Source: Macrostomum lignano
Lineage: Eukaryota
DNA: 64,000 bases
Assembly (NCBI GenBank): GCA_002269645.1
Contig: NIVC01001387.1
Coordinates: 66,136-130,135, forward strand
Reading direction: 5' to 3'
Of the stretch, positions 29,826 to 60,489 are shown in pieces. Position 1 is the first letter of the stretch. Every line of letters begins with the position of its first letter. A program made the position numbers and the translations under genes. The notes under the pieces were generated by a model. It made no database searches. It worked only from the letters and a program-made list of their open reading frames with translations, and was not told the DNA's origin.

Positions 29826-32800
29826 ATGAGCAGCAGTAGCAATCAGCAGCAGCCTGTATTGACAGCCAGTCAGTTATTAAAGCGTCCATCAGTGTTGGTT
29901 CAGCCAACCTCGATGTCTGTTACCTCAACAGCAGCAGCTTCAAAGTCATCTGCTTCGGCTAATTTCGTTACTGCTGGCAAGCGGCTCCGGCTGCATCGTC
30001 TTGGCGATGCTGCGGCTGACTCGCCTCCTCCTGTTGTTGAATCATCGCCTGGCGCGTCAATCATCCAGCATCAGCAGCAGCAGCTTCATCATACTGTTGA
30101 TAATAACGGCGGCAATGTAGGCGATGATCATCAGGGAGTCTTGCCAGCCGAAATCATTGTCGGCAATCATAATTCTACCGACGATAATAGCGTCAAAGAT
30201 GATGATCATGAAGACGACGTTCTTGCCGATGTGCTTGGAGTTGCTAGGCAGCAGCGCAGTGGTGGCGGCCGCAGTCGTCGGTCAGTTGTTGAAAACAACG
30301 GCCAGGACGTTCTGCTAACCAACGCTTCGTCGTCCACAACGGCCAAGAACGGCGCCGTTGTTAAAAGCCTGCCATCGAATCCTAGGCGGACTGTCACCGT
30401 GCGACTCGCTAGACCGTCGGCTACTTCGCCAACAACCACAGTGGTCGTATCGCCGACATCAGCAGCAGCGACTTCGATCAGCATTGGCGGCCAGATGGAC
30501 GACGATGTCATTGTCGACGATGAGGTTCTTGACGAGGACAATGAAGATGTTGATGACGAAGATGCCATCGTTGGCCAACTGTTGTCGGCTGCAGCCGCTT
30601 CCACAGCTTCATCCTTATCGCCGACATCGTCTACTTGGACTCCGACAGCGTCGAATTCTTCGGCGACAAATTCTTCAACTGTTTGCTGCTCGGTGTGCGG
30701 CACCAATCGTCGAGTTAATTTGCACTACGGCGTGCACGCCTGCGAAAGTTGTCGGAATTTTTTCAAACGAGCTCTGGCTAATAATCAGCAATCGTCTGTG
30801 TCGGACGTCGGCGGCTCGTTGTCGCCTCCGACGCGTCTAGTCTGCGTACGCGGCGGCAATCAGTGCGACGTGACGCCGAATAATCGGTCGGATTGTAAAG
30901 CCTGTCGATTGCGCAAGTGCCTGGCTGTTGGCATGAGCCGAGAGTCGTGCAAACTGGGGCGTAGACCGCTGGCTGCTCAGACTGAGACAACAGTAGCCGT
31001 AGGCGATGATTCGCTTAATAGGGCCAGGGCGCTGTCGGATTTGCAGCTGCAGGAGGCCTTGCAACAGGCTAGGGCTGAGGACAGAGTGAGTTTTTAGCTT
31101 CTAAATATGAAAGAGCGTAGCTAATAGCTGTCTAATAAAATGCATTCGACTTTAAAACATTGCGCAATAATTAGGACTACAGGGAATAAAAGGAATAAAA
31201 GACAATCGAGTGGCATATTTGGGGACTGATAGTAAATAAGGTGGCTGAGCTGGAAGACTAAGGGAGAGGCTGATGTTGGAAACTAAGGGACCATGGGAGA
31301 GGCTGATGTTGGAAACTAAGGGACCATGGGAGAGGCTGATGTTGGAAACTAGGGAACCATGGGAGAGGCTGATGTTGGAAACTAAGGGACCATGGGAGAG
31401 GCTGATGTTGGAAACTAAGGGACCATGGGAGAGGCTGATGTTGGAAACTAAGGGACCATGGGAGAGGCTGATGTTGGAAACTAGGGAACCATGGGAGAGG
31501 CTGATGTTGGAAACTAAGGGACCATGGGAGAGGCTGATGTTGGAAACTAAGGGACCATGGGAGAGGCTGATGTTGGAAACTAAGGGACCATGGGAGAGGC
31601 TGATGTTGGAAACTAAGGGACCATGGGAGAGGCTGATGTTGGAAACTAAGGGACCATGGGAGAGGCTGATGTTGGAAACTAAGGGACCATGGGAGAGGCT
31701 GATGTTGGAAACTAAGGGACCATGGGAGAGGCTGATGTTGGAAACCAAGGGACCATGGGAGAGAGTTTTAGTTCAAAAAGTATTCATTCATATGCTGTAA
31801 ATATAATTACCATTCAACCCAACACTCAGGTCCTTCACCGTCGAGTAGTACTCAAGACGTCGCCGCATCAGCCAGCCAGTGCCAGCAGTTTCGCTGTTCC
31901 ATCGTCAAGCAGCGCTTCAACTGTTGGTGTAGCATCTCCGCCAGCCATTGAGATCATCCGCGATCTGACAACGCAGCAGCCTGCAGCCTCTAGCGAAGAG
32001 TTTCAACAGTTGAAATCGTCTCTCATTGATCAGTGCCAGCAATTGGCTGGCGGAAATCGAACACGCGACTCGATTGGTCAGCTGATTCGCCAATTGTCAC
32101 CGGCTGTGTTGCGATCAGTTGAACAGCGAAACCCGGCTGGTCGGGCCCAGTTCTGCGCCCAGCTAATTCGAGTTTCGGGAAATCTATCAGGTAACAAGCA
32201 GCAGCAACAACAGCAGCAACAACAACAGCAACAAGATGCATCCGTTGTTGTCGCCTCCGAGGTTGTTCACGAAGAGGTTGTCCGTAATGAATCCGACACA
32301 GATTCTGATGTTGAACAGGCGTCTTATGGTCAGCGTCAGCAGCAGCAGCAGCAGCAGAAACAACCTCAGTTGCCATCTGCCACAATGATTAAGCTTGCTC
32401 CCCAAGGTACTCAGCAGCCTCAATCTGCATCAACTCCAGCTGTGACAGCCAGTCGGTCTCAAACTCGAACTCAACTAACTCGCCAGTGTCACTCAATAGC
32501 CGACGAGGACTTTAAAATCCTACCAGTTCAACGAGAGTACTGCCGCGATTTGCTCAGCGAAATGATTCAACAATTGGAAGATCCCGTGTTGGACTCGGTG
32601 CTTCGAAGGCGTCAGGCCAGAGATAGACTCTGTCGCGAATTAGTGAAGATCTCCTTGGAGATTATGGCATCCGGGCGGACGGCTAGGAATCTTGTACCGT
32701 TTGGCTATTCGCCAACGTCCATTGTTGAACAGTTGCAATTGTACTTTAAAATCGTATTCGGCCCGGACATGCTGCAGGAGATTGTGCAATCGTCGCAGGA

Positions 32801-33770
32801 CTTGAAAAACACTCCACCTCAGATGGACTCGACCGAGAATTTTCGCGACTATTTGTGGAATCTGTACGTTTTCCGAATGAACTTTATCCTGTCCAAGGTG
32901 TGCGATTTTGCTATTAAATTTGGAGAATTTCAATCATTGTCAACCGCGGATCGCTGCCAGATTGTGTTGAACTGTTTCAAAGCTGCCGCCATTCTGATCC
33001 ACTCCCAATTTTGGGTGGTGTCGCCTGCCTGCTACCTGCTAGTGCAAGATCGCAGTCTCAGTCTGGCCGATATGAAGGCTCATTTCTTGTACGGCGAAGA
33101 GTTTGTCAGGCTGTCGTTCGAGTTCACTAAGGATCTGGTTGAGCTCCGGCTCAAAGAGGAAGAATTCGTCATCTTTCTCACTTTGGTTATCTTCTTCTTT
33201 GGTGAGCGGGGCTTTGTCTGTTGCTTGCTTTTTTTAACTGACCGTCTGAGGACTAAAAACTATCTTAGATTCTATTTTGCCGTCTATACTCTATCCTATA
33301 GATTCTATCCACCCCTGTTTATCTATCACATCAACTTTGCACAATTTTACATTTATTATAGTAGATAGAAGAAAGGTTTACTTATTCGTTACTAATTCGA
33401 GAATATGCTAGCTTAAATGTGTTATTCATTGCACCCCTACCACACAGACACAGGCAGCAGCCTATCACCGCCGGACCTATCCGGCCGGGGCATTCTAACC
33501 AACATGCGCAGGCAGCTGTTCTCAAAACTCGAACGAGTTGTTGGCCAGCAGCGTCGCTACCTTCGCGTACTGCAACTTTGGCGCTCATTGAAAAAGCTAG
33601 TCACCGAGGAGGACAAATGCGTCGGCAATTCGGCTAGTAAAATAGTTGATAAGTGTTTGCAGCACTATAATAGCGGCTCGGATAATGCCAATGCGATTCG
33701 ACTGTATCCGGATCTGTTTTTAACTAAACAGACACATCTAGTGCAGATCTGGCTGTCTGGCAAGAAGTGA
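29826..33770 (+). CDS. Divergent nuclear hormone receptor (NR1-like), 3 exons, about 984 aa
   Basis: Exons 29826-31085 (AGA|GTGAGT), 31830-33201 (G|GTGAG, phase 1), 33448-33770. DBD CSVC-X14-CESC...C-X6-C-X9-CKACRLRKC then GMSRESCKLGRRP. LBD with FAIKFGEFQSLSTADRCQIV, LRLKEEEFVIFLTLVIF and C-terminal LYPDLFL. Confidence 0.92.
31262..31762. repeat. 33-bp minisatellite in nuclear receptor intron 1
   Basis: GGGAGAGGCTGATGTTGGAAACTAAGGGACCAT, about 15 copies. Confidence 0.97.
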
Positions 33771-43339: not shown

Positions 43340-43815
43340 AGGCTAAGGGAGTGACTCTCTCATCGTATGCTAAGGAGTGACTCTCTTATGGTCAGCTAAG
43401 GAGTGACTCTCTTATGGTCAGCTAAGGAGTGATCTCTTATGGTACTCGTAGGCTAAGGAGTGACTCTCTCATGGTCAGCTAAGGAGTGACTCTCTTATGG
43501 TCAGCTAAGGAGTGATCTCTTATGGTACTCGTAGGCTAAGGAGTGACTCTCTCATGGTAGGCTAAAAGAATGACTCTCATATGGGAGGCTAAGGGAGTGA
43601 CTCTCATGATAGTCTGAGGGAGTGACTCTCTCATTGTAGGCTAAGGGAGTGACTCTCATGATAGTCTGAGGGAGTGACTCTCTCATTGTAGGCTAAGGGA
43701 GTGACTCTCATGGTAAGCCAATTGAAGTGACTCTCAGTGGAGGCTAAGGGAGTGACTCTCAGTGAAGCCTAGGAGTGACTCTCAGTGAAGGCTAGGAGTG
43801 ACCCTCAAGAGGGCT
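43340..43815. repeat. About 26-bp degenerate minisatellite (GCTAAGGAGTGACTCTCTTATGGTCA)
   Basis: Directly visible 3' of GLIS. Confidence 0.9.
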
Positions 43816-44579
43816 GAGTGCGTCACGGGAAAATAATAAAGAAGTCATCAAACAAACCACGGTGCATTTAAATTAACGCAAGACTTTAGAAAAAAACAAA
43901 CATATCGTACAGACGCATTCTGCAGGTTGCCAAGTGAATTTGAATTAACAGTTTCGTTTTATTTAAATTGCTTCACTTACTCTCTCCACCATTCGTCAGT
44001 AAAAATGCATCAGACAGAGAAAACCGCATTGAAGTACAAATCACGCACAGTTCGATACTTACAAAAAACCCAACATATCGCATCGTTTTTATTTGCATAA
44101 CTTACGTACATTTTTAAGGTTTATCATACGCAGCTAAATTGTTATTAAACTGAATATACTACTATTCAAATTTAAAAGTACACAAAAACAAGATTGTAAT
44201 CGCAATTATTAGAAACCGGATTACACACTTTAACGAGCAGAAATATGCCGTCAAAAATGAACATTTCTTTCGCATTCTAAGGATTCTTTTAGTCATAGCG
44301 CGCAAAGAAATTCTAACAACATACGGTATAGACTACTGTTCTAGACTATACGCAAGACGCAAGTAGTGCAAAAAACATTCGACAATATGATTTGTGTCAT
44401 AGAGTAGAATTAAATCTTACGCATTTTTTGTTGGCTTTGTTGATGCACAGATTGCAAGGGGGCGTCTTGTCTAGAATGGGGTGCATTGACAACGGGCAGG
44501 GACTGTTTAAATCAGCCATGAATAATAAATTAACAACAATAAGTGCTGATTTATATTGAAAACTGGTGCATGCTAATCC

Positions 44580-45385
44580 CCAAGAGAATAAACTAAACCT
44601 TAGAAAAAACACCCAGAATAAACTAAACCTTAAAAAAACACCCAGAATAAACTAAACCCTAGAATAAACACCCAGAAAAAACATTCAGAATAAACTATCT
44701 AAACCCTAGAATAAACACACTGAGTATACTAAATAAACCCTAGAATAAACACCCAAAATAAACTAACTAAACCCCAGAATAAACAACCGATTTCCCCGTA
44801 ACACCCAGGAAACCCACAGAAAACGAAACCTTATAATAAACAAACACTTAAAATAAATTAAACCCTAGAATAAACACCCAGAATAAACTAAACCCTAGAA
44901 TAAACACCCAGAATAAACACTCAGAATAAACTAACTAAACCCTAGAATAAACACACTGAGTACACTAAATAAAGCCTAGAATAAACACCCAAAATAAACT
45001 AACTAAACCCCAGAATAAACACCCGATTTTCCCGTAACACCCAGGAAACCCACAAAAAACGAAACCCTATAATAAACACTTAAAATAAATTAAACCCTAG
45101 AATAAACACCCAGAATAAAATAAACCCTATAATAAACACCCAGAATAAACTAAACCCTATAATAAACAGGCAGAATAAACTAAACCCTATAATAAACACC
45201 CAGAATAAACTATACCCTATAATAAACACCCAGAATAAACTAAACCCTATAATAAACACCCAGAATAAACTAAACCCTATAATAAACACCCAGAATAAAC
45301 TAAACCCTATAATAAACACCCAGAATAAACTAAACCCTATAATAAACACCCAGAATAAACTAAACCCTATAATAAATACTCAGAA
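44580..45385. repeat. 30-bp minisatellite (CCCAGAATAAACTAAACCCTATAATAAACA)
   Basis: Homogeneous at 45090-45385, degenerate to the left. Confidence 0.93.
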
Positions 45386-46722
45386 TGCACGAGACTATTT
45401 AATCCGAAGTTAACCTGAAACAAAATGGCAAAACGTTGCACACAATAGTAAAAGTGCGAATAGAAACGTGACCAGATAGAATTTATAACAGACAAGAGCA
45501 GCGCGTAAACAGCTGAGGTAATATAATAAATGAACTCACATTTTCAAAAGTACATTTAGTCTAAAAATCCATTAATAATATCGGCGTACATTTATATCAC
45601 ATAAATAATCAATATAAACAAATGTGACTGAGATTTTTCAACAACAATTGTTCAACGAAATAATTGTAAAATGTCTCTATCAATCTATTAGTAGTTAAAA
45701 AAGGACATGTTAAACTCTTTGGACAGTGCAAAAATTATAATACATTTAGGAACAAACTTAAATGTCAAGCGCAGGCTAATACATTTTAGGATGTACATAT
45801 CGTTGGGTAAAACGTTATTGGGATAAGAGAAGATTGAAGTATTAAGGACTTAAATTGGACGAAATAGCAAACACAGCTATCACAGCTCCGGCCACTTGAC
45901 TAGAGATTCAAAAAGATAAACAAAAAGATTTTAAAGTATAACAAGGTCTGTCCAATGCAAAACTTATTAATATCAGCTGCAAAAACGCATTGCAAATTAG
46001 CTTGTTGACTTGGTAATAACAATTAGTGTTCAAGTTGTTCAGTTATAAGGAAAAGCAACAAAATTGTTGATCTTGTACTCGTCCAGGGTATTCGAAGGCT
46101 CGTCAATGTTGATTACAGCAAAACGCTATTCGGATCAACTCGAGGTGCGACCTGAAATAGTTTTTTTTAAATTCCCAAATATTACGCAATATTTTTTAAG
46201 ATAACTCAAATTTTATTAGCTTTTTCTGATATTTCTACTGAAAATAGCTCGCAGTAGCGCAATGGAGATTTAGTGCCCCAAAGCAAAACACGAATACGCG
46301 ATGTTGGCGAAAGCGAAAGCAGTAACGAGGCCTCTTTATTTATATTTTATTGATTAAAAGAATAAGGATAAAAGAAGAAGAAAAAAAAAGAACTGCGCGA
46401 AAACACTGCCAACGCAGCAGCGCGGCTGGAGTAAAATACCCCCCCCACCGGCGGAGGGGTGGGCGCCCACCTAAACAACACAGAACGTACACACGCGGCG
46501 GGGGGGGTGCACCACAGACGCAGCGCACTTGGGCACTAAAGCCGGTTTGCTCAAGGCAAGCCTAGCGCAAACCGCAGCCTTAGTGCCCCAAAGCAAAACA
46601 CGAATACGCGATGTTGGCGAAAGCGAAAGCAGTAACGAGGCCTCCAAAGCCGAAACAACAACGGGAAAGCGCGTGAAAGAAAAAATTGAAGGAAACGGAA
46701 CATCGTAAAGCTGATGCCAACG

Positions 46723-47808
46723 TCAAACGAGGGATCCCACACCTCTAGCAAACACGACGGAAGCTGCCAAGCCCTGCTGCGACTGCGGGAGATACCGCTG
46801 CACTGAGTCGCTCTTCCAGTCACCGATCCGCATGATGTCGGGCACCGGCACACCCAACACCGAGGCCCAGGTCGCGCCGCCACGGCGGAGGCTGTGGGCT
46901 GAGAAGTGCTCACGCCTGAAGCCCGCAGCCCCTAGCTTGTCCGCTAGGAAGCGATCGAGCTACCTGACCGTCAGCAGCCGCTGGTTGCCTCCGGCGTCGC
47001 GATAAGTGAACAGAGGCGCATCAGCCGATTGCAGATTATTGAATCTTGCGTGCTGCTCGATTGCTAACACCGGGCACAGCGACGTCCGCCTCACTAGCCT
47101 TGGTAGAAGCACCTGGTGCACCCGCTCTTTGAACTGGAGAGTCTTCCCTTGCTCCAGGCGCAAGATCAGACCTCGCGGGTGTCGAAAGATGTCAGCGCAG
47201 CGCACACGTGCCGGACCTTTTCCCGAAGTCGGTAGCACGCTGGATTTTCGGAGCATGCCCCACTAACAGCAGATGGCGACTGCCCAGCATGCCAGCTGAA
47301 GCCCGTCAGAACGACTGACTCGCTGATGAATCTCCGACAACATGAGCGGCGATACTGGTCGTTTTCTCGACACCCGAAGTCCCAGCTCTCGCTTGGCACC
47401 TCGCAGGAGGAGAGTCGTTGCGGCATGCTTCGTCAGGTCTGGTGCAGAGTTGACGCGAAACCAAACGGACAGCGAGCTGGCGACAGAAGCAACGCTGCCG
47501 TACGCACGCAAACGCGTCCCGACTAGGCTGGCCAGGTAGTCGAGCAGGCTGTTCAGCGGACAGGATACAGGACTGCAGCGGGTCTGCTTGCAGTAAGCTA
47601 GCCACTCACGGATGTGCCTTGCCACCGCCTGCCTTGACCGTGGTGCATAAGAGACGCCTAGCAGCGACGCGGCCCGGCGGCTGAGAGAGTCTGGCGCAGC
47701 TGGACGGCCTGAAAATGAAGAAAGTGGGCAGAGGCAGGGCAGAAAGCATGTCGATGCATTGATTGCAAAGCAAACGGGCACAAGTTGCCATAGCAGCGAA
47801 ATAAAAAA
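46723..47808 (-). pseudogene. Ngaro ORF3 tyrosine recombinase, interrupted by two in-frame TAG codons
   Basis: One continuous frame: SYAPRS...W..YC core-binding region; AICC*WGMLRKS (catalytic R); GKT; LTVR*LDRF; AHSLRRGGAT (H-x-x-R); IGDWKSDSVQRYL (W, Y); TGA at 46725-46723. TAG codons at 47265-47263 and 46962-46960. Confidence 0.9.
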
Positions 47809-49361
47809 TTAATCAACTGACTGCGCTCGTGCAACCGAGACGCTGCATCGGCGAGAATTTGAAACTCTCCCGGCACATGAAAGGCTCGCACACTCAGACC
47901 ATGCCGTAAAGACATCAACGCAATCGTTTGCAGTAGCCTCTGCACGACAGGACACCTCGAAGTGCCATTATTGATAATATGACAGGCCGCCATGTTGTCA
48001 CAATAAACGCTAACGTTACAGCCTTTCAGCTCTTCCCTCCAGCGCAGGATTGACAGCAAAGGAGCCACCGCCTCTTTGTAGTTGATTGGCAGATCAGCGA
48101 ACACTCCGGCCCCATCCTGGCTCCAATTGATGTAGCACCAGTCCCAACTGCCATCTGACCTTCGAAGCACCGCTGCCCCGCCTCTGCCACATGCATCGGA
48201 CTCGATGGCCACATGGTTCTTGAAAACAGGCCAGAGCTCCACCCACCGGGCCGACTCCAGCGCTACAATCCACCAGCAGAATTGGTCACAGAGCTGTAAG
48301 CTGACTTTAATTCTCTCGTCAGGCCGCATAGCGTTGCACACTTCGATCAGATCACGCAGAAAAGTTTTTCCTTTGCGAATCACCTGTGCTGCCCAGCCAA
48401 GCTTGCCGATCAAGCGTTGCAAAGCCCGCTTGCTGATCCTGGTTTTGCTCCTTTCAGTTGCTAACAACTCAGCGAGGTTCCTCGCCTTCTCCTCGGGCAA
48501 CCTCTTGATGCCGGCCACTGTATCGAACTCGACACCAAGGAAGGTCATGCGCTGAGTTGGTGTCTGACACTTTGCCCAGTTTACAGTGAAGCCCAGCCGC
48601 GTCAACAGGCCTGTCAGCTCGTCGTAAAACCGCTGGCATTCGTCACGCGAGCCCGCGAAGGCGAAATCGTCCAGGTAGGACTCGGTGCCCACAAAGCCTC
48701 TGCGCACCATCATTAAACGCACAGCATTGCTAAGATGGTGAAAACAGGTAACAGAAGCTGCAGCGCCAAACGGCAAACGGGTGTCATACATGTAGGTGGC
48801 TGCCTTGGACTCGCCGAAGCGGAACTTGATCCCTGTCCGGCTGAAATCATCGGGGTGAACACCACAGGCGCGGTACGCTTCGCTGAGATCCACCTTAGTC
48901 ATAAAGCAGCCTCTAGAAAGCTTCCTCGCAAAGTTGTCGGCACACGTGAAGCGCAGCCTCTCCTGGCTGACCCATCTGGAGTTCACAGAGTTATTCACGG
49001 GCCGACTGCAGTCGTGAATCAGGCGCACACGGCCACCAACCTTGGGCAAGGCTCCGAGAGCACTGACCACTTGCGGACGCCAGCCGGTCGGGCACTCGCG
49101 ATACCTGCCACACCCGAGCTCCTTCTTAATCTGCTTTTCCACAGCCTCGAAATGCACATTGACAGAATGGTAGTTGTTAACATCAATTGACTTGCAGTCA
49201 GAAACAGTTTTGTTAGTTATACGAAAACCATATGCAACACCATCGAGAATAAACTTCTTCCGATCCATAGGCAAATCAATACACAACAGCTCCTTCTCCC
49301 ACTCCACGAACCTCAAATCTGTAGATAAAACGGGGACGTTAAAATCACTACGGGCACTTAG
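47658..49361 (-). CDS. Ngaro ORF2 reverse transcriptase-RNase H
   Basis: KVGGRVRLIHDCS, KVDLSEAYR, RLPFG, YLDDF, FLG, then RNase H ESDA...E...CDNMAA...ADAASRL. The frame is open from 49361, directly after the gag stop and in frame with it. Confidence 0.95.
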   Translation of the reverse strand, partial: LSARSDFNVPVLSTDLRFVEWEKELLCIDLPMDRKKFILDGVAYGFRITNKTVSDCKSIDVNNYHSVNVHFEAVEKQIKKELGCGRYRECPTGWRPQVVSALGALPKVGGRVRLIHDCSRPVNNSVNSRWVSQERLRFTCADNFARKLSRGCFMTKVDLSEAYRACGVHPDDFSRTGIKFRFGESKAATYMYDTRLPFGAAASVTCFHHLSNAVRLMMVRRGFVGTESYLDDFAFAGSRDECQRFYDELTGLLTRLGFTVNWAKCQTPTQRMTFLGVEFDTVAGIKRLPEEKARNLAELLATERSKTRISKRALQRLIGKLGWAAQVIRKGKTFLRDLIEVCNAMRPDERIKVSLQLCDQFCWWIVALESARWVELWPVFKNHVAIESDACGRGGAAVLRRSDGSWDWCYINWSQDGAGVFADLPINYKEAVAPLLSILRWREELKGCNVSVYCDNMAACHIINNGTSRCPVVQRLLQTIALMSLRHGLSVRAFHVPGEFQILADAASRLHERSQLINFLFRCYGNLCPFALQSMHRHAFCPASAHFLHFQAVQLRQTLSAAGPRRC

Positions 49362-50402
49362 TCAGTGCGAGGGCCTGGCCGTCTCGATACCCACGCCATC
49401 CCGGTGGGCAGCCGCTTCTGAGTGGCCTAGACCGCACCTCCGGCATTGATGAGCAAACTTGCAGTTTCTTCTGCTGCAACCGGCTTCCTTATTGAAGTCA
49501 AAGCACACAGGCTGCTGGCTCCGCTTCGACAGTCTCTCTGAGGCAGTCGGACCCCTCTGTGGTGCCATCAGGTAGGCGGCCACCAGACCCATGTCGGAGG
49601 CTCTGGCTTCCCAAGAGGTAGTAGCTGTCTGGCTTATTCTGCACTCATCGTCGAATCTCATGACGCGGGTCTTCTCGAAACCAAGGTCAAAAAGCTCTCC
49701 TATCCGAATATTAAAGCGCAGGTAGTCTCGGAGCTCAGAAACATCAGGACATTCTCCTTCACCGCTCTTAACTAGAGCTCCATCATCCAGCATCTTCAGC
49801 ATTATGCGCGCATTGCCAGCAATCCAGTCGCCAAAGGTCAGAGATTCTAACGCTGCCTCCTTCACTTTGTAGACAACTTTACCTGTCCGATCAACAGACT
49901 GGATGATACCCGCTTCCTGCTGCTTGCGTTTACAGATGAATTCGGGGATGCGGTAGGTACCATGCGGGATCGCTGGTCTAGCTGACTCACTCCCTGATAT
50001 CACGTGACCAAACAACTCACCATGGTTAGTTGAGGGAGCCCGGTGCCGCTGCAATAGGTTAACCTCGGCCTGCAGCTCGGCTTCTTCCTTGCGCAGTTTC
50101 AGCAGCCGTATACGCTGCTCGACTTCCCGCACCTCGTCGTCCAGGCCGCCAGCCGCTCCAGACTCTGACGCCGCCGTCGCAGCTTCGCCGTCCGCCGCAG
50201 CCGCCAGCAAATCTTGAATGTTCTTCGAGCGAGTCGTCTCCGGGGTCAGTGAAGGTCTGCGATCATCGCCGTCCTGCAGTTCTGTAACGCTGTCGATGTG
50301 TGCAGACAGCCTCTCCAATAGCTCCATTTTGTTTCCGTGGGTTGGCAGGCCTAGGCATTGCAACCTCTCGCGCAGTGACTTGACAGTGTCAGTGCTAGCC
50401 AT
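49362..50402 (-). CDS. Ngaro ORF1 Gag-like protein (N-terminal SAP motif, coiled coil, C-terminal Cys/His zinc-binding cluster)
   Basis: TVKSLRERLQCLGLPTHGNKMELLERL (SAP-like); CFDFNKEAGCSRRNCKFAHQCRRCGLGH. ATG at 50402, TGA at 49364-49362. Confidence 0.88.
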   Translation of the reverse strand: MASTDTVKSLRERLQCLGLPTHGNKMELLERLSAHIDSVTELQDGDDRRPSLTPETTRSKNIQDLLAAAADGEAATAASESGAAGGLDDEVREVEQRIRLLKLRKEEAELQAEVNLLQRHRAPSTNHGELFGHVISGSESARPAIPHGTYRIPEFICKRKQQEAGIIQSVDRTGKVVYKVKEAALESLTFGDWIAGNARIMLKMLDDGALVKSGEGECPDVSELRDYLRFNIRIGELFDLGFEKTRVMRFDDECRISQTATTSWEARASDMGLVAAYLMAPQRGPTASERLSKRSQQPVCFDFNKEAGCSRRNCKFAHQCRRCGLGHSEAAAHRDGVGIETARPSH

Positions 50403-50648
50403 GATTCAGCGATTGGCATTAGAGTTCAGTGCAAAAAGAACTGCGCGAAAACACTGCCAACGCAGCAGCGCGGCTGGAGTAAAATACCCCCCCACCGGCG
50501 GAGGGGTGGGCGCCCACCTAAACAACACAGAACGTACACACGCGGCGGGGGGGGCGCACCACAGACGCAGCGCACTTGGGCACTAAAGCCGGTTTGCTCA
50601 AGGCAAGCCTAGCGCAAACCGCAGCCTTTGTACTATTTTCATATAATG

Positions 50649-51986
50649 TTAACATATATTAAAACGAACCGCTCCAGGCGTAGCCAAAACGTCGGTAGTT
50701 GCAGTTGTTGTTGACACAGTTGTCATGGCAACAGATGTTGAAGTTGAGTTTAATGAAGATTGCTTCTGCTGCTGCTGTTGAGACTGGGCCCCGGCGCCGT
50801 AGAATCTGGGCGATAGCAGGGCGTGGTGAATCTGGTCGCAGACGCGTTTAAAACGTCGCACTGGGCCTGTGTGTGGATTAAATTTAAGTTACATTTTCTT
50901 GAGACTTTACTAACAGTAGAAATAGCAGTGAATAAAGTGAAATCACGGCCAAGGACTCACCTGAGATCAGCTGGAAATTGACAGCAAACAGCAGTCTGTC
51001 CGGGTCAGGCCGGTGAATTTCTACCTGGAATTTCACCGGTCGATTGCTGAGCGAAGCGGCCGCGGCCGCGGCAGCCGCTGGTCGGCGCAGTTCGGCTCGA
51101 AAGGACATCGGCGACAGGACCGTGTGAATCAGGTCGGGCGTCTGCAGTAGGGCGTGAACTAGGTCGGCTTTCACTCGATTGAGGGGCCGGTCACGGATCA
51201 GCACCACGTGACTGCCAGAGGAGGCGTCGGCTGCTGCGGCAGCGGCGGCCACGGCGGCTGCGGCACCGGAGGCGGCGGAGTTGACGCTTGACGCAGCCAC
51301 AGCGGTGGTGGCCGGCGGTGCCGCTACTGACTGATGCTGATGCTGATGCTGCTGATGCTGCTGCTGCTGTGGTGGTGGAAATTAGGGCATTTTCTCTAAA
51401 TGAATCGATGTACTTTTTATGGATTTGGACTGGGATAACATTGGATAAAGGATGAATTTAATTATTAAAAATACAGTTGATTTAAGGGTTGATTTAGGGG
51501 CGGATAGGGGCAGAAAGAGGGTAAGTTGGGGGCGAATAAATAGGTAGGATGGGGGCGGATAAGGGGTAGGTTGGGGGCGGATAAGGTGGTAGGTTGGGGG
51601 AGGGATAAAGGGGTAGGTTAGGGCGGATAAAGGAGTAGGTTGCGAGGCGGATAGGGGGTAAATTGGGGGCGGATAAGGGGTACGTTGGGGCGGATGAGAT
51701 GTAGGTCTGGGGCGGATAAGGGGTAGGTTGGGGGCGGATAAGGGGTAGGGGCGGATTGGGTGTGCGCGAATAAGGTTTAGCTCAGGTTGGAAATGAAGAG
51801 AAGCTCACTGAGCTCCTCTGATGCTGCTGCTGGTGACCATGGCCGTCGTAATGATGATGATGGTGGTGACCTCCGCCACCAGGCAGGAAAGCGGTGAACC
51901 AAGATCGGCGAGACAATTCCGGACTGGCTTCCGGCGTTGTACCGGAAGCGAGCGCAATGGACTGTTGGTGTTGATGATGCTGGTGA

Positions 51987-52027
<41 letters not shown>

Positions 52028-54467
52028 CTGCTGCTGTTGCTGCTGCTGTTTGCTACGCCGATGAAATCGTGGCGTACCCAAAGTAGTGGCCAAGGAGGTC
52101 TTCAACGAGTTCAATCTGGACCGCCAGCCCGGCTGCTCCGGCGACGCGGCCGTCAAAGAGCCGCCGGAAGCTCCACCAGCGGCTGCCGCAGCGGCGGCGG
52201 CGCCTCGCCCGGACAGCAGCGGCGTCGTTGGCGGCGTCGGCGGAGGTCGCCTCGAAGCTGCCGGACTTGCAACCGCCGCGGCGATTGCCGCATTTCCGGC
52301 TGAGGACTTCCGGTAGGACTGGACGGTGAGGGCCCGCCTGCCGGCCACCGGGGAGCCCTCGCTCAGGCGGTAGCCCAGCTGTGGCGAGCCGCACAGGCTG
52401 TTGGCGTGGAGTCGCAGCGAGTCCGTCCGCTTCCTGGGCGGATCCGGGGTGCTGTTCCGGCTGCGGATCTCTTCCGGGTCATCCAGGCAGGGATTGCGGA
52501 GCTTCCGGTCCATCAGCAGGAAGTAGATAACCTGCGGTGGGGAAATGACTGCTATGACCGAGGATAAACTGGCATGACCAGCTCCTATGACTGAGAATAA
52601 ACTGGTATGATCACTGACAAGCTATGACTATGACCGAGGATAAACGGATATGACCAGCAGCTATGACCGAGACTAAACGGATATGACCAGCATCTATGAC
52701 CGAGACTAAATGGATATGACCAGCAGCTATGACCGAGACTAAACGGATATGACCAGCATCTATGACCGAGACTAAATGGATATGACCAGCAGCTATGACC
52801 GAGACTAAATGGATATGACCAGCAGCTATGACCGAGACTAAACGAATATGACCAGCAGCTATGACCGAGACTAAACGGATATGACCAGCAGCTATGACTG
52901 AGACTAAACAGATATGACCAGCAGCTATGACCGAGACTAAACTGATATGACCAGCAGCTATGACCGAGACTAAACGAATATGACCAGCAGCAGCTATGAC
53001 CGAGACTAAACGGATATGACCAGCAGCAGCTATGACCGAGACTAAACGGATATGACCAGCAGCAGCTATGACCGAGACTAAACGGATATGACCAGCAGCA
53101 GCTATGACCGAGACTAAACGGATATGACCAGCAGCAGCTATGACTGAGACTAAACGGATATGACCAGCAGCAGCTATGACCGAGACTAAACGGATATGAC
53201 CAGCAGCAGCTATGACCGAGACTAAACGGATACAACACGCCAGAGAAATGAACATCAATGCCTATACCTTCTCCGTATTGTGCTGCGGCGAGAGCAGCTC
53301 CTTAGTCAGTTTATCCCGATCCTGAAAGCACTGCAGCGATGTCATCGTGTTGAAAATGTCGGGGTCAATGTCCTCCTTGGATTGAATAACACTTGTAGCC
53401 ACGGCGCTAATCATGTGCGCCTCGGTGTCCAATTGAACTTCGCTGTCGCTGCGTTTTTGGATGCAAAAATAATTATTACACTGATAATTACCATTATGCA
53501 CTACTTGTAAAAGTAATAATTTCAGGTTAGGGTTTTTTATTTAGTATTTACTTACGCGGCAACCCAAGGATGCTTGAGAACGCCGTCAGCGAAGTTCAAC
53601 TGAAAATTTAACAAATATGAGGTGATCTTATATGAGGCTATTTTTAGGCCATTCTCAACTGAGATTTAGAAGCAATAAAACTTACACTAATCCTTCGTAT
53701 CGGATCAACCTCAATCATAGCCCTGAGCAGCTGCTGAGCTTCGGCGGGCACAAAGTGTGGAATGTGGAACACGCCTTTTTTCACCTTCTCCAGCAGGTTG
53801 CGCAAATTGTCGTCATCGAATGGCAGGGCGCCCTGGTTTTGTTTTTTTTACGCGAGGCTTAAGTTTTTTGACTGCATGGCCTTGTAATTAGACTAGGGAG
53901 GGCCTGGCTGATTTCAAAAACCCCAATTAGGCTGGGGAAGGGGTTGGCTGATTGCACAAACCCCAAATAGACTGCGGGAGGGGTTGGCTGATTGCACAAA
54001 CCCCAAATAGACTGCGGGAGGAGTTGGCTGATTGCACAAACCCCAAATAGACTGCGGGAGGGGTTGGCTGATTGCACAAACCCCAATTAGACTGCGGGAG
54101 GGGTTGGCTGATTGCACAAACCCCAAATAGACTGCGGGAGGAGTTGGCTGATTGCACAAACCCCAAATAGACTGCGGGAGGGGTTGGCTGATTGCACAAA
54201 CCCCAATTAGACTGCGGGAGGGGTTGGCTGATTGCACAAACCCCAAATAGACTGCGGGAAGGGTTGGCTGATTGCACAAACCCCAAGTAGACTGGGGGAG
54301 GGGTTGACCAATTCTAATTGCACCCTTGCATGTATTCTGATAAACTTGAAAATAGATATGCGTATTCCAAAGCCATAAAAGTTCAACCAAATGCTCACCA
54401 CTAGCAAAGCGTAGAGTATGACTCCGGTACTCCAAATGTCAGCCTTTCTGCCATCGTACTTCTCACC
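50649..54467 (-). CDS. BRSK: BR serine/threonine kinase (BRSK/SAD-1), 3' seven exons; 5' kinase exons not found in the window
   Basis: Exons 54467-54399 ([23 protein letters not shown]), 53832-53686 ([25 protein letters not shown]), 53599-53556, 53448-53268 (UBA-like), 52531-51809 ([17 protein letters not shown]), 51366-50961 (KADLVHALL), 50866-50649 (GPVRRFKRV). All junctions are GT-AG with compatible phases. Confidence 0.92.
51490..51765. repeat. 21-bp G-rich repeat in BRSK intron (GGGGCGGATAAGGGGTAGGTT)
   Basis: About 12 degenerate copies. Confidence 0.9.
52555..53232. repeat. 33/36-bp minisatellite in BRSK intron
   Basis: GACCAGCAGCTATGACCGAGACTAAACGGATAT; units gain an extra CAG from about 52980 onward. 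Confidence 0.96.
53890..54310. repeat. 40-bp minisatellite in BRSK intron
   Basis: GGGTTGGCTGATTGCACAAACCCCAAATAGACTGCGGGAG. Confidence 0.96.
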
Positions 54468-55324: not shown

Positions 55325-56285
55325 TTGAACACCAGTTAGACTGGGGGAGGGGTTGGCTGATTGCACAAACCCTAATTAGGCTGGGGGAGGGTTTGGCAGA
55401 TTGCACAAACGCCAATTAGACTGGCGAAGGAGTTGGCTGATTGCACAAACACTAATTAGGCTGGGGAAGGGGTTGGCAGACTGCACAAACCCCAATTAGG
55501 CTGAGGGAGGGGTTGGCTGATAGCACAAACGCCAATTAGGCTGATGGAGGTGTTGGCTGATTGCACAAACGCCAATTAGACTGAGGGAGGGGTTGGCTGA
55601 TTGCACAAACGCCAATTAGACTGGGGAAGGAGTTGGCAGATTGCACAAACACTAATTAGGCTGGGGAAGGGGTTGGCAGACTGCACAAACCCCAATTAGG
55701 GTGAGGGAGGGGTTGGCAGATTGCACAAACCCCAATTAGGCTGAGGGAGGGGTTGGCTGATTGCACAAACGCCAATTAGACTGGCGAAGGAGTTGGCAGA
55801 TTGCACAAACACTAATTAGGCTGGGGAAGGGGTTGGCAGACTGCACAAACCCCAATTAGGCTGAGGGAGGGGTTGGCAGATTGCACAAACCCCAATTAGG
55901 CTGAGGGAGGGGTTGGCTGATTGCACAAACGCCAATTAGACTGGGGAAGGAGTTGGCAGATTGCACAAACACTAATTAGGCTGGGGAAGGGGTTGGCAGA
56001 CTGCACAAACCCCAATTAGGCTGAGGGAGGGGTTGGCTGATTGCACAAACCGCAATTAGGCTGAGGGAGGGGTTGGCTGATTGCACAAACACTAATTAGG
56101 CTGGGGAAGGGGTTGGCAGACTGCACAAACCCCAATTAGACTGAGGGAGGGGTTGGCTGATTGCACAAACCCCAATTAGGTTGAGGGAGGGGTTGGCTGA
56201 TTGCACAAACCCCAATTAGGTTGAGGGAGGGGTTGGCTGATTGCACAAACGCCAATTAGACTGGATGTGGAGTTGGCTGACTGCA
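55325..56285. repeat. 40-bp minisatellite, same family as 53890-54310
   Basis: GGGGTTGGC(T/A)GATTGCACAAAC...AATTAG(G/A)CTG, about 23 copies. Confidence 0.96.
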
Positions 56286-56699
56286 AAACTCTCTGAACGG
56301 TTTTGTGCCTTGTTTTTTAAAGTAACGTTATCATCTAACGTCTTAACTGCGCTTCCAAATTCAAGTTTAACACGGAACTCACTGAACCAGCTCGTATATA
56401 AAAATTCAGTACGAAAAAGGCGATTAAAGTGGAATTCTTAAATTCTGACCTAATTGTCTCGGCATTCAATAGTAAGCATAACAATCAAGGCAAGACCCGT
56501 GAACTCTTACTCGTATACCCGATTCTTTCTGCCCCTCCTGCCCAACAATCAAGCAGAACTCGACGCGCCAGTCAAAGTCGTGACGCTGCATACAAACAAG
56601 CTTAAAGAGATGAGGCTTCGTCTCGGCGTTGCAGACTCGAGTCAGATCAATTCACTCAGCTTGATTTGCACTTTAAATTTGTATGCCCCCAGTCGCATG

Positions 56700-57190
56700 G
56701 CTCAGAAACTGATGATCTGGGAGGCTGGCCCAGCAACTGATGATCTGGGAGGCTGGCCTAGCAACTGATGATCTGGGAGGCTGGCCTAGCAACTGATGAT
56801 CTGGGAGGCTGGCCTAGCAACTGATGATCTGGGAGGCTGGCCTAGCAACTGATGATCTGGGAGGCTGGCCTAGCAACTGAGGATCTGGAAGGCTGGCCCA
56901 GCAACTGAGGATCTGGGAGGCTGGCCCAGCAACTGAGGATCTGGAAGGCTGGCTCAGAAACTGATGATCTGGGAGGCTGGCCCAGCAAATGAGGATCTGG
57001 GAGGCTGGCCAAGCAACTGATGATCTGGGAGGCTGGCCTAGCAACTGATGATCTGGGAGGCTGGCCCAGCAACTGAGGATCTGGGAGGCTGGCCCAGCAA
57101 CTGATGATCTGGGAGGCTGGCCTAGCAACTGATGATCTGGAAGGCTGGCCCAGCAACTGAGGATCTGGGAGGTTGGCATAGCAACTGAGG
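56700..57190. repeat. 28-bp minisatellite (AACTGATGATCTGGGAGGCTGGCCTAGC)
   Basis: About 17 copies; reverse complement of the 28-bp unit in UTP15 intron 4. Confidence 0.96.
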
Positions 57191-57800: not shown

Positions 57801-57804
57801 GGAA

Positions 57805-58600
<796 letters not shown>

Positions 58601-59279: not shown

Positions 59280-59925
59280 CAGGAGACACAAAAAGAGAAG
59301 AGAAGGGAATTAAGGAGACACAGATAAGATAAGAGAAGGGAATAGGGAGACACAGATAAGGGAAGAGAAGGGAATTAGGGAGACACAGATAAGGGAAGAG
59401 AAGGGAATTAGGGAGACACAGATAAGATAAGAGAAGGGAATAGGGAGACACAGATAAGGGAAGAGAAGGGAATAGGGAGACACAGATAAGGGAAGAGAAG
59501 GGAATAGGGAGACACAGATAAGGGAAGAGAAGGGAATTAGGGAGACACAGATAAGGGAAGAGAAGGGAATAGGGAGACACAGATAAGGGAAGAGAAGGGA
59601 ATAGGGAGACACAGATAAGGGAAGAGAAGGGAATTAGGGAGACACAGATAAGGGAAGAGAAGGGAATTAGGGAGACACAGATAAGGGAAGAGAAGGGAAT
59701 AGGGAGACACAGATAAGGGAAGAGAAGGGAATTAGGGAGACACAGACAAGATAAGAGAAGGGAATTAAGGAGACACAGACAAGGGAAGAGAAGGGAATTA
59801 GGGAGACACAGACAAGATAAGAGAAGGGAATTAGGGAGACACAGGCAAGGGAAGAGAAGGGAATTAGGGAGACACAGGCAAGGGAAGAGAAGGGAATTAG
59901 GGAGACACAGACAAGGGAAGAGAAG
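59280..59925. repeat. 32-33 bp purine-rich minisatellite
   Basis: GGGAGACACAGATAAGGGAAGAGAAGGGAAT(T)A, about 19 copies. Confidence 0.96.
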
Positions 59926-60489
59926 GGAGGGTTGGAGGGTAGCAAAGTTGATTTTCTATTTGCAGAAGAAAAATCTAACACAAAATAACAATTTTATATA
60001 CATTGGATCTGCCCATAAAAACATCATATTTACACTCGCACGTTGCACTTTTGATGAAGCTGTTAATGCCAGGGCAGCTGGCGCGGAAGGGAAGCAGGCC
60101 ATGGCTATACAGTGTTCTCATATGTCTGCTCTGGCAATACTTCTCAAGGCGGAGAACTCGACACTATAGTTATTAGGACAGCCCATGACTAGCCACAACA
60201 GTTGGTCTCAGCTGCAGACTGGGCTAAACAGAATTAGTGTTTACCTTGGAGCCCGCATCGATGTAGGCTAAGGGGCAGATACAGTAGGGTAGCGTTAACC
60301 ACATAACAGCTCTGGTTTCAATTTCTTCATAGATAATTCAGAATCAGCTATTTAATTAGGTACCTAAATATAGATTCTATGAAGACTTCTATTAGATTAG
60401 TTAAGCTCGAACAAGCAGTACCCAAAATTCAATATTATTCTTTTTAAATTTAGCCATAGCAAAATATTCACTTTGAAGAATCTCACGCA

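What the first reader, a model, noticed from the sequence alone, without database searches (positions are those of the whole stretch)
49300..49380. Ngaro gag and pol are in frame, separated by a single UGA in the UGA-CUA readthrough context
Seen: on the minus strand gag ends ...TCG CAC TGA (49364-49362), and the same frame continues without a stop as CTA AGT GCC CGT... into the whole RT-RNaseH ORF. The first in-frame ATG (MDRKKF) lies downstream of the W-containing block (VLSTDLRFVEWEKEL) that usually opens this RT family. Established: UGA followed by CUA is a known leaky context (alphaviruses; UGA-CUAG in animal genes), and gammaretroviruses make Gag-Pol by readthrough, whereas DIRS/Ngaro ORFs are usually described as separate or overlapping. 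Inference: this element makes Gag-RT-RH by programmed readthrough. A candidate stem-loop follows the stop (GUAG...AACG-UCCC-CGUU...CUAC). AGUGCCC just after the stop is complementary to GGGCACU at the 3' end of the B repeats, so a long-range stimulator is possible.
Basis: partly seen in the sequence, partly recalled or inferred. Interest (0 to 1): 0.9.

Follow-up and report, generated by a model that had tools for sequence, protein, structure and literature searches.

The report
Leaky stop joins Ngaro gag-pol
A jumping gene (Ngaro-type retrotransposon) in the flatworm Macrostomum lignano has its coat-like gene and its copying-enzyme gene in one reading frame, split by a single weak stop codon. 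Distant relatives keep this layout, so the enzyme is most likely made by ribosomes occasionally reading through the stop, as in some retroviruses.

Summary
On the minus strand, gag (50402-49365) ends CAC-TGA (49364-49362). The same frame continues CTA... for 567 codons through RT and RNase H.

The TGA is not a private mutation. Three related elements (L001, L002, L004; gag 53-55%, pol N-terminal region 61-63% identical) keep His-TGA-C with pol in frame. In 78 more distant Ngaro-like loci:
- About 23 independent lineages have one in-frame stop at the same place, 16-55 residues after the gag CCCH finger.
- The stops are 18 TGA, 5 TAG, 0 TAA.
- TGA-C makes up 13/23, against 20/149 for other long-ORF stops (p = 1.6e-5).
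- Twelve other lineages put pol in the -1 frame, and all 12 have an in-phase A_AAA_AAC just before the gag stop.

Codons straight after the stop are under purifying selection. Invariant pol residues lie upstream of the first ATG.

Best reading: context-driven (UGA-CUA, "type II") readthrough gives a Gag-RT-RNaseH fusion, which would stay uncleaved by any element enzyme because no protease is encoded.

The proposed stem-loop and the 7-nt long-range pairing are not supported. This copy's recombinase gene carries two premature stops. No direct translation evidence exists. No prior report was found in the held literature.

The parts
46270..50631 (-). Whole Ngaro-like tyrosine-recombinase retrotransposon, about 4.36 kb. 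Order on the minus strand: A1, gag, pol, YR, B1, A2, B2. B2 may extend to 46255.
   Evidence: Split direct repeats. gag, RT/RH and YR coding regions. It is the only copy in the window.
50433..50631 (-). A1 repeat (5' end).
   Evidence: 98.5% identical over 200 nt to A2 at 46385-46584.
49362..50402 (-). gag-like ORF, 346 aa plus the TGA. Intact.
   Evidence: ORF listing. Homologous to gag ORFs of L001-L003, 44-55% identity.
50295..50387 (-). SAP domain in gag (aa 6-36).
   Evidence: Pfam PF02037, E 6.8e-07, above the gathering score. Also annotated in the L005 gag.
49449..49505 (-). CCCH-type zinc finger near the gag C-terminus (C-x8-C-x4-C-x3-H). It ends 28 residues before the stop.
   Evidence: Read from the translation. 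The same motif ends 16-55 aa before the junction stop in 24 of 26 in-frame relatives.
49359..49367 (-). Proposed readthrough signal CAC-UGA-CUA. The stop is at 49364-49362.
   Evidence: Sequence. The identical 9-mer is at the L001 junction. The His codon, TGA and +4 C are kept in L001, L002 and L004. UGACUA is a type II motif and the weakest UGACUN terminator.
47658..49361 (-). pol open frame, 567 codons plus TAG, in the gag frame. Intact. No start codon of its own upstream of conserved residues.
   Evidence: 50-63% identical to pol of L001-L005 over the N-terminal 300 residues.
49287..49328 (-). Conserved pol N-terminal block LSTDLRFVEWEKEL. It lies between the stop and the first in-frame ATG (49268-49266).
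   Evidence: S13, D15, L16, W21 and E24 are invariant in six elements. The relatives have no ATG at a conserved position.
48525..48944 (-). Reverse transcriptase domain (pol aa 140-279).
   Evidence: Pfam RVT_1, E 4e-11.
47931..48224 (-). RNase H-like domain (pol aa 380-477).
   Evidence: Pfam RT_RNaseH, E 6e-4, below the gathering score. The family is also annotated for relatives P0006, P0019 and P0024.
46723..47808 (-). Tyrosine recombinase gene, in the -1 frame relative to pol, overlapping pol by 151 nt. Broken: two premature in-frame stops (both TAG), no frameshift.
   Evidence: A single-frame homology span of 358 codons to uninterrupted YR ORFs of L001, L009, L019, L011, L026 and others. 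Two stops lie inside it. Weak Phage_integrase hit.
46580..46644 (-). B1 repeat.
   Evidence: 100% identical over 65 nt to B2.
46385..46584 (-). A2 repeat.
46270..46334 (-). B2 repeat (3' end).
49321..49351 (-). Judged not to be a functional element.
   Evidence: The local fold gives only a 4-bp hairpin. z = +1.3 to +1.9 against shuffles. No consensus structure in four relatives.

Best explanation
The element is a Ngaro-like tyrosine-recombinase retrotransposon in the Macrostomum lignano genome. Its pol (RT-RNase H) has no initiation codon of its own before conserved residues, and it is in frame with gag behind a single UGA.

Proposed mechanism:
- Most ribosomes translating the full-length RNA terminate at this UGA and make Gag, which has a SAP domain and a CCCH finger.
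- A minority decode the UGA with a near-cognate tRNA. The stop sits in an intrinsically weak termination context (UGA followed by C, here UGA-CUA). These ribosomes continue and give a Gag-RT-RNaseH fusion at a fixed low ratio.
- No stimulatory RNA structure is needed or detectable, so the signal is the stop and its immediate neighbours.
- The element encodes no protease. The fusion would therefore not be cleaved by an element-encoded enzyme. Gag would serve as the handle that brings RT to the RNA or particle.

Shown: the in-frame architecture, its conservation, the context bias, and the selection on the codons after the stop.

Inferred: that ribosomes actually read through, the efficiency, the residue inserted, and the fate of the fusion.

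This particular copy has intact gag and pol but a recombinase gene with two premature stops. It is probably a decaying, non-autonomous copy of a family in which the signal is functional.
For: (1) Architecture. 347 + 567 open codons with one stop, and RT/RH domains downstream.

(2) Conservation in the closest clade. The window, L001, L002 and L004 all read His codon, TGA, C, with pol in frame and 9-11 codons to the L-S-[TS]-D-L motif. Gag identity is only 53-55% and identity over the pol N-terminal 300 residues 61-63%.

(3) Wider conservation. 26 of 38 classifiable Ngaro-like loci have a single in-frame stop.
- In 24 of the 26 a CCCH finger ends 16-55 aa upstream of it.
- 13 loci have at least 250 open codons before and at least 480 after the single stop.

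(4) Context bias. After removing near-duplicates there are 18 TGA, 5 TAG and 0 TAA. TGA-C is 13/23 against 20/149 for other long-ORF stops in the same loci (Fisher p = 1.6e-5). Three of the TAG cases are TAG-G, and two of those (TAG-GGG, TAG-GAT) match type III hexamers.

(5) Translation of the post-stop codons.
- Five invariant residues lie upstream of the first ATG.
- L028 and L040 both keep TGA-CAG. Their dN/dS is 0.085 in gag, 0.086 in pol and 0.11 in the first 40 codons after the stop.

(6) Sister lineages solve the same problem by the other classical recoding route. Pol is in the -1 frame, and an in-phase A_AAA_AAC lies 0-36 nt before the gag stop in 12 of 12 loci. The two modes are interleaved on the pol tree. 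This argues that a Gag-Pol fusion is what selection maintains.

(7) Published context. UGACUA is a type II readthrough hexanucleotide in alphaviruses and a dicistrovirus (PMC13517186). It was the weakest UGACUN terminator in mammalian cells (PMC5829715).

(8) No SECIS or other Rfam family is present in the window.
Against: - There is no direct evidence of translation past the stop: no ribosome footprints, peptides or transcripts were available.
- Only one copy of this family could be examined. No second copy is in the window, and the exact gag product is not on record elsewhere. Conservation is therefore shown between families, not between copies.
- No downstream stimulator was found. Efficiency would rest on context alone, and it is unmeasured in flatworms.
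- This copy already carries two nonsense mutations in YR, so nonsense mutations do occur in it.
- The hosts of the metagenomic relatives are unknown.
- About 40% of in-frame junction stops are not followed by C, and some of these may be decay products.
- A trans-spliced or internally initiated pol mRNA cannot be excluded from DNA sequence alone.
Confidence: 0.78

Rival explanations
1. Private nonsense mutation. The family has a fused gag-pol ORF, and this decaying copy acquired a TGA by chance.
For: The copy is decaying. Its YR gene has two premature stops and the A repeats differ at 3 of 200 positions. Only one copy of the family could be inspected.
Against: - L001, L002 and L004 are separate families at 61-63% identity over the pol N-terminal region. 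They carry TGA at the homologous codon, after the same His codon and followed by C.
- The same position holds a stop in about 23 further lineages, with a non-random stop and context spectrum.
- No relative in the close clade has an uninterrupted gag-pol ORF.
Confidence: 0.03
2. Pol is made independently of gag. Possible routes are internal initiation at Met32 or a non-AUG codon, reinitiation after termination at the UGA, or a spliced or SL-trans-spliced subgenomic mRNA. On this view the in-frame arrangement is incidental.
For: An ATG exists 32 codons after the stop. M. lignano trans-splices many mRNAs (my own knowledge, not tested here). YR expression in these elements clearly uses varied, non-recoding arrangements.
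Against: - Five invariant residues and a low dN/dS lie upstream of any ATG.
- Relatives have no ATG at a conserved position.
- An incidental frame relation would give all three frames. Under strict criteria only in-frame (26) and -1 with A_AAA_AAC (12) are seen, and no +1.
- The stop spectrum is biased to leaky signals, which independent initiation does not predict.
Confidence: 0.12
3. The UGA is decoded as a standard sense codon, either as selenocysteine or through a variant nuclear genetic code in the host.
For: UGA is the codon reassigned in both situations.
Against: - No SECIS or any Rfam family is present in the window.
- UGA occurs exactly once in 914 gag-pol codons. A sense UGA would recur.
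- Five relatives use TAG at the junction.
- Sister lineages frameshift instead.
Confidence: 0.01
4. Readthrough occurs but depends on an RNA stimulator: the local stem-loop or the AGUGCCC/GGGCACU long-range pairing proposed by the first reader.
For: The complementary segments exist. Several viral type II sites use extended 3' stem-loops (PMC13517186).
Against: - Post-stop segments of 60-240 nt fold no better than dinucleotide shuffles in all four relatives (z -1.0 to +2.7, mostly positive).
- RNAalifold finds no consensus structure.
- The 7-mer is at chance frequency, is not unique in the RNA and is not conserved.
- Pseudoknots were not modelled.
Confidence: 0.06

Closest known systems
Gammaretrovirus / epsilonretrovirus Gag-Pro-Pol synthesis by stop-codon readthrough (PMC13517186)
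   Same: A single in-frame stop lies just downstream of the nucleic-acid-binding zinc finger of Gag. The downstream enzyme ORF has no start of its own. The logic is a fixed low ratio of fusion to Gag.
   Different: - Those viruses use UAG-G (type III) with an obligatory pseudoknot. Here the signal is UGA-CUA (type II) with no detectable structure.
- Retroviral fusions are cleaved by the encoded protease. This element encodes none (PMC3783388).
- Integration is by a tyrosine recombinase, not a DDE integrase.
Type II readthrough sites UGA-CUA / UGA-CGG of alphaviruses, coltivirus and a dicistrovirus (PMC13517186)
   Same: The hexanucleotide is identical (UGACUA). UGA is strongly preferred over UAG and UAA, matching the 18:5:0 spectrum found here.
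   Different: - Those are RNA-virus replicase or capsid-extension genes, most with an extended 3' stem-loop starting +2 to +16.
- None is found here.
- Efficiency here is unmeasured.
Ngaro / DIRS-order tyrosine-recombinase retrotransposons as described in the held literature (PMC3783388, PMC6681497, PMC8547959)
   Same: - The gene order is gag-like ORF, then RT/RH, then YR.
- The split direct repeats are arranged A1 ... B1-A2-B2.
- There is no protease and no DDE integrase.
- The YR ORF is frameshifted relative to pol and overlaps it.
   Different: The papers I could read describe the ORFs as separate, overlapping or frameshifted. They do not mention gag-pol recoding, and no held paper combines Ngaro or DIRS with readthrough or frameshift signals. 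The original Ngaro description (Goodwin and Poulter 2004) is not held, so it could not be checked.
-1 programmed frameshifting at X_XXY_YYZ heptamers in retroviral and LTR-retrotransposon gag-pol
   Same: Sister lineages of this element (L003, L005 and ten more distant loci) have pol in the -1 frame with an in-phase A_AAA_AAC at or just before the gag stop. L003, L005, L021 and L026 have a stem-loop starting within a few nucleotides downstream of the heptamer.
   Different: The window's element does not use this route. Downstream structures are not uniformly significant across the 12 loci (mean z -0.2).

Membership tests
Ngaro-like YR retrotransposon (DIRS order) | Encodes reverse transcriptase and RNase H. 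| tested here: met
   RVT_1 E 4e-11. RT_RNaseH E 6e-4, below the gathering score. 98 pol homologues.
Ngaro-like YR retrotransposon (DIRS order) | Encodes a tyrosine recombinase instead of a DDE integrase, and has no aspartic protease. | tested here: met
   The YR frame is homologous over 358 codons to YR ORFs of relatives, with a weak Phage_integrase hit. No rve or protease family appears in any ORF. The gene is broken in this copy (two stops).
Ngaro-like YR retrotransposon (DIRS order) | Split direct repeats arranged A1 ... B1-A2-B2. | tested here: met
   A copies at 50433-50631 and 46385-46584 (98.5%). B copies at 46580-46644 and 46270-46334 (100%). The order is as described in PMC6681497.
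Ngaro-like YR retrotransposon (DIRS order) | No methyltransferase domain in pol (this distinguishes Ngaro from DIRS1-like elements). | tested here: met
   Pfam finds only RVT_1 and RT_RNaseH in the 567-aa pol.
Ngaro-like YR retrotransposon (DIRS order) | Phylogenetic placement of RT/RH with reference Ngaro elements. | not tested
   No named reference Ngaro sequence was available from the tools. Relatives are unnamed metagenomic or Logan contigs and two Oculina patagonica models.
Programmed stop-codon readthrough site | An in-frame stop between two ORFs, where the downstream ORF lacks its own start before conserved residues. | tested here: met
Programmed stop-codon readthrough site | The stop is conserved at the homologous position across diverged relatives. 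| tested here: met
Programmed stop-codon readthrough site | Purifying selection on the codons immediately 3' of the stop. | tested here: met
   dN/dS is 0.11 for the first 40 codons in L028 against L040. pN is below pS in window against L001 and L002. Invariant residues.
Programmed stop-codon readthrough site | Extended protein detected, or ribosomes observed past the stop. | not testable with these tools
   No expression, ribosome-profiling or proteomic data are reachable.
Type II readthrough motif (UGA-CUA / UGA-CGG) | Hexanucleotide UGACUA or UGACGG. | tested here: met
   UGACUA at 49364-49359. Definition from PMC13517186.
Type II readthrough motif (UGA-CUA / UGA-CGG) | Extended 3' stem-loop stimulator (present in most characterised viral examples). 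| tested here: not met
   z scores are mostly zero or above over 60-240 nt in four relatives (range -1.0 to +2.7). There is no consensus structure. Pseudoknots were not modelled.
Selenocysteine recoding | SECIS element in the transcript. | tested here: not met
   The Rfam gathering scan of the whole window gave no match.

The most novel reading that the evidence does not exclude
Ngaro-like tyrosine-recombinase retrotransposons, as a lineage, obligatorily make a Gag-RT-RNaseH fusion by translational recoding. The fusion has no element-encoded protease to cleave it. The lineage has switched repeatedly between two interchangeable signals: a context-only leaky stop (UGA-C, occasionally UAG-G) and an A_AAA_AAC -1 frameshift site abutting the gag stop. 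This would be an undescribed expression strategy for the DIRS order. It would also be a natural replicated series for studying how recoding signals replace one another.
Probability: 0.5. Interest if true: 0.65.

Novelty: new member of a known kind. Interest (0 to 1): 0.55.

Why it matters
Gag-Pol recoding is textbook for retroviruses and LTR retrotransposons. In the literature I could search, it is not described for the tyrosine-recombinase (DIRS/Ngaro) order.

If confirmed, three things would follow:
- A fixed Gag to Gag-Pol ratio would be shown to be selected even in retroelements that have no protease to separate the two.
- Annotators would have a rule for Ngaro elements: do not call the in-frame TGA a pseudogene lesion, and do not start pol at the first ATG.
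- There would be dozens of natural UGA-C, UAG-G and A_AAA_AAC junctions, from closely interleaved lineages, for comparative study of recoding signals in invertebrate hosts.

For this locus, it also means the copy's gag-pol unit is intact while its recombinase is not.

Tried and rejected
1. Other copies in the window: none. tblastn and blastn of the element against the window return only itself and its own repeats.
2. Exact look-up of the gag product in public assemblies: not on record. Copy-to-copy comparison within the family was therefore impossible.
3. Local stem-loop after the stop: rejected. MFE z scores are 0 or positive and there is no consensus fold.
4. Long-range AGUGCCC/GGGCACU pairing: rejected. 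It is at chance level, not unique and not conserved.
5. A '+1 frame' class of junctions appeared in the first loose classification (8 loci). It vanished under the stricter rule, a gag ORF of at least 150 codons whose stop lies in the overlap. Those loci are decayed or truncated.
6. A downstream stimulator for the -1 class. L003, L005, L021 and L026 have clear stem-loops, but the class mean is z = -0.2. No general claim is made.
7. Recoding at the pol-YR junction: no consistent signal across loci.
   - Frames are -1, +1 or 0, usually with a nearby ATG.
   - The window has U_UUU_UUA in pol phase exactly where the YR frame opens, and L001 has U_UUU_UUG at the homologous N-F-L codons.
   - L004 has none.
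   - This is left as an observation.
8. Selenocysteine: no SECIS.
9. Literature: seven searches and several full-text look-ups found no statement on Ngaro or DIRS gag-pol readthrough or frameshifting. The 2004 Ngaro description and the 2015 review are not held. A prior remark there cannot be excluded.
Full report
**1. What is at the coordinates**

Read on the minus strand, a 346-codon ORF (50402..49365) ends ...GCC CTC GCA CTG? No. In the correct phase it ends ...TCG CAC TGA, with the TGA at 49364-49362. Translating straight through gives ...ETARPSH*LSARSDFNVPVLSTDLRFVEWEKELLCIDLPMDRKKF.... The frame then stays open for 567 codons, to a TAG at 47660-47658.

- The upstream ORF has a SAP domain (E 6.8e-07) and a C-terminal C-x8-C-x4-C-x3-H finger.
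- The downstream frame has RVT_1 (E 4e-11) and an RNase H-like domain (E 6e-4).

So 914 codons are interrupted once.

**2. The element and its host**

Direct repeats give the Ngaro signature on the minus strand. This matches the A1 / B1-A2-B2 order described for Ngaro, PAT-like and VIPER elements (PMC6681497).

- A1 is at 50631-50433.
- The coding region follows.
- B1 is at 46644-46580.
- A2 is at 46584-46385.
- B2 is at 46334-46270.

A third gene lies in the -1 frame relative to pol and overlaps it by 151 nt. It is homologous over 358 codons, in a single frame, to uninterrupted tyrosine-recombinase ORFs of relatives. In this copy it contains two premature in-frame stops (both TAG) and no frameshift. 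Gag and pol are intact. The A repeats differ at 3 of 200 positions.

The window holds only this one copy. The host is Macrostomum lignano: a UTP15-like ORF at 27380-28405 is 99% identical to a protein of that species. The window also carries a nuclear receptor, a ubiquitin-conjugating enzyme and an FHA-domain ORF.

**3. Is the TGA a private lesion? The close clade**

A search with gag found only three proteins (44-55% identity). A search with pol found three close ones (52-61%) and then a drop to 39% or less. Their contigs are L001-L005. The junctions are:

| Locus | Junction | Codons from stop to L-S-[TS]-D-L motif |
|---|---|---|
| window | CAC-TGA-CTA | 11 |
| L001 | CAC-TGA-CTA | 11 |
| L002 | CAC-TGA-CAT | 9 |
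| L004 | CAT-TGA-CTC | 11 |

In each of these, pol continues in the same frame.

- L002's gag is disrupted further upstream. Its conserved C-terminus (...CRKCGLGHSEAAAH...VRPSH) is nevertheless in the pol frame.
- These elements differ from the window's at about 40% of pol N-terminal residues and about 45% of gag residues, so they are separate families.

**4. The two other members of the clade frameshift instead**

In L003 and L005, pol is in the -1 frame. Gag ends ...GCA AAA AAC TGA and ...CCA AAA AAC TGA. That is an A_AAA_AAC heptamer in the correct X_XXY_YYZ phase, abutting the stop. A 9-18 bp stem-loop starts 5-8 nt downstream.

**5. Wider sampling**

A metagenome scan with an alignment of pol N-termini returned 78 further loci at 27-59% identity. 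I walked upstream from the pol homology in each locus.

In-frame class: 26 loci, including the window and L002.

- Each has a single in-frame stop behind a long upstream ORF.
- In 24 of them a CCCH finger ends 16-55 residues before the stop.
- 13 have at least 250 open codons before and at least 480 after the single stop.

Frameshift class: 12 loci have pol in the -1 frame behind a gag ORF of at least 150 codons.

- All 12 have an in-phase A_AAA_AAC 0-36 nt before the gag stop.
- By my own rough estimate, chance expectation is about 0.003 per locus.

No +1 class survives the strict rule. The remaining loci are truncated or decayed.

After collapsing near-duplicates, the in-frame junction stops are 18 TGA, 5 TAG and 0 TAA.

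- TGA-C accounts for 13 of 23.
- Among other stops ending long ORFs in the same loci it accounts for 20 of 149 (Fisher one-sided p = 1.6e-5).
- Hexamers include TGACTA (3), TGACTC (4), TGACTT, TGACGN (3), TAGCTA, TAGGGG and TAGGAT.

These match, or are close to, the type II (UGACUA, UGACGG) and type III (UAGGGV, UAGGAU) hexanucleotides listed in PMC13517186. In mammalian cells UGACUN is a weak termination context, and UGACUA was the weakest of them (PMC5829715).

**6. Are the codons after the stop translated?**

- Five residues invariant across six elements (S13, D15, L16, W21, E24) lie upstream of the window's first in-frame ATG at codon 32. The relatives have no ATG at a conserved position.
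- L028 and L040 are a moderately diverged pair (dS 0.6-1.2) that both keep TGA-CAG. Their dN/dS is 0.085 in gag, 0.086 in pol and 0.11 in the first 40 codons after the stop.
- In the window's own clade synonymous sites are saturated, but pN (0.28-0.35) is well below pS (0.65-0.75) on both sides of the stop.

**7. Phylogenetic pattern**

On a neighbour-joining tree of the pol N-terminal region, without support values, the readthrough-type and frameshift-type junctions are interleaved. Small clades are uniform. The window groups with L002, L001 and L004 (all in-frame), and that group is sister to L003 + L005 (both -1). What is conserved is a recoded gag-pol junction. The device varies.

**8. What is not supported**

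- The 60-240 nt after the stop fold no better than dinucleotide shuffles in the window, L001, L002 and L004 (z from -1.0 to +2.7, mostly positive). RNAalifold finds nothing.
- GGGCACT occurs 9 times in the window against 5.6 +/- 2.3 expected. Its partner AGUGCCC occurs four times in the element RNA. The post-stop sequence is not conserved in relatives.
- No SECIS or other Rfam family is present.

**9. Mechanism proposed**

Context-driven readthrough of UGA-CUA gives a minor Gag-RT-RNaseH product alongside Gag. YR retrotransposons lack a protease (PMC3783388). The fusion would therefore not be cleaved by an element enzyme. Gag's SAP and CCCH modules would tether RT to nucleic acid or to a Gag assembly.

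- Shown: sections 1-7 above.
- Inferred: actual readthrough, its rate, the inserted residue and the fate of the fusion.

**10. Comparison and novelty**

The logic is that of gamma- and epsilonretroviruses, and the signal is that of type II viral sites. The differences are the absence of a stimulatory structure, the absence of a protease, and the tyrosine recombinase.

Membership in Ngaro is met on gene content, repeat architecture and lack of a methyltransferase. Placement against named reference elements was not possible.

I found no paper in the held library that links Ngaro or DIRS to readthrough or frameshift signals. The original descriptions are not held, so I cannot exclude an earlier remark.

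I therefore rate it a new member of a known kind, of moderate interest. The family-wide alternation of two recoding devices is the more novel part.

**11. Caveats**

- Only one copy of the family was seen.
- The relatives come from metagenomes and run assemblies of unknown hosts.
- The contigs may be collapsed multi-copy assemblies.
- The tree is a quick NJ tree.
- Pseudoknots were not modelled.
- No expression data were available.

Noticed in passing
L003:859-960, L005:1050-1151, and L007, L008, L009, L021, L026, L033, L045, L050, L055, L076: Twelve related Ngaro-like elements have pol in the -1 frame. Every one has an in-phase A_AAA_AAC heptamer 0-36 nt before the gag stop. L003, L005, L021 and L026 also have a clear stem-loop starting within a few nucleotides downstream of the heptamer. 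This looks like a family-wide -1 frameshift signal.
   Followed up: partly
window 47802-47808 (minus strand): A U_UUU_UUA heptamer in pol phase sits exactly where the recombinase frame opens, 141 nt before the pol stop. The first ATG in the recombinase frame is 317 nt past the pol stop. L001 has U_UUU_UUG at the homologous N-F-L codons, but L004 has none. Across distant loci the pol-YR junction shows no consistent signal. How YR is expressed remains open.
   Followed up: partly
window 46723-47808 (minus strand): The tyrosine recombinase gene of this copy has two premature in-frame TAG stops and no frameshift, while gag and pol are intact. The copy is probably non-autonomous.
   Followed up: yes
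window 27380-28996, 29826-33365, 5248-5811, 11738-12811: Host genes with long uninterrupted exons:
- UTP15-like (99% identical to a Macrostomum lignano protein, which identifies the host).
- A nuclear hormone receptor (zf-C4 plus ligand-binding domain).
- A ubiquitin-conjugating E2.
- An FHA-domain ORF.

   Followed up: partly
window 43340-45463, 51479-51765, 52562-53258, 53889-54306, 55328-56289, 56698-57188, 57804-58599, 59282-59928: The element is embedded in a dense field of minisatellites with periods 22, 25-26, 28, 30, 33 and 40 nt. There is also a roughly 800-bp (ACAG)n microsatellite. These generate spurious long ORFs on both strands.
   Followed up: no
window 51782-52513 (minus strand): There is a 243-aa ORF with a run of about 22 Gln plus His-rich and Ala-rich tracts, just upstream of the element's A1 end. 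It could be a host exon or a low-complexity artefact of CAG/CTG repeats.
   Followed up: no
L037, L080, L046, L016: A minority of in-frame junctions use UAG rather than UGA. The hexamers are TAGGGG, TAGGAT, TAGGAC and TAGCTA. The first two match the type III readthrough hexanucleotides listed in PMC13517186.
   Followed up: no
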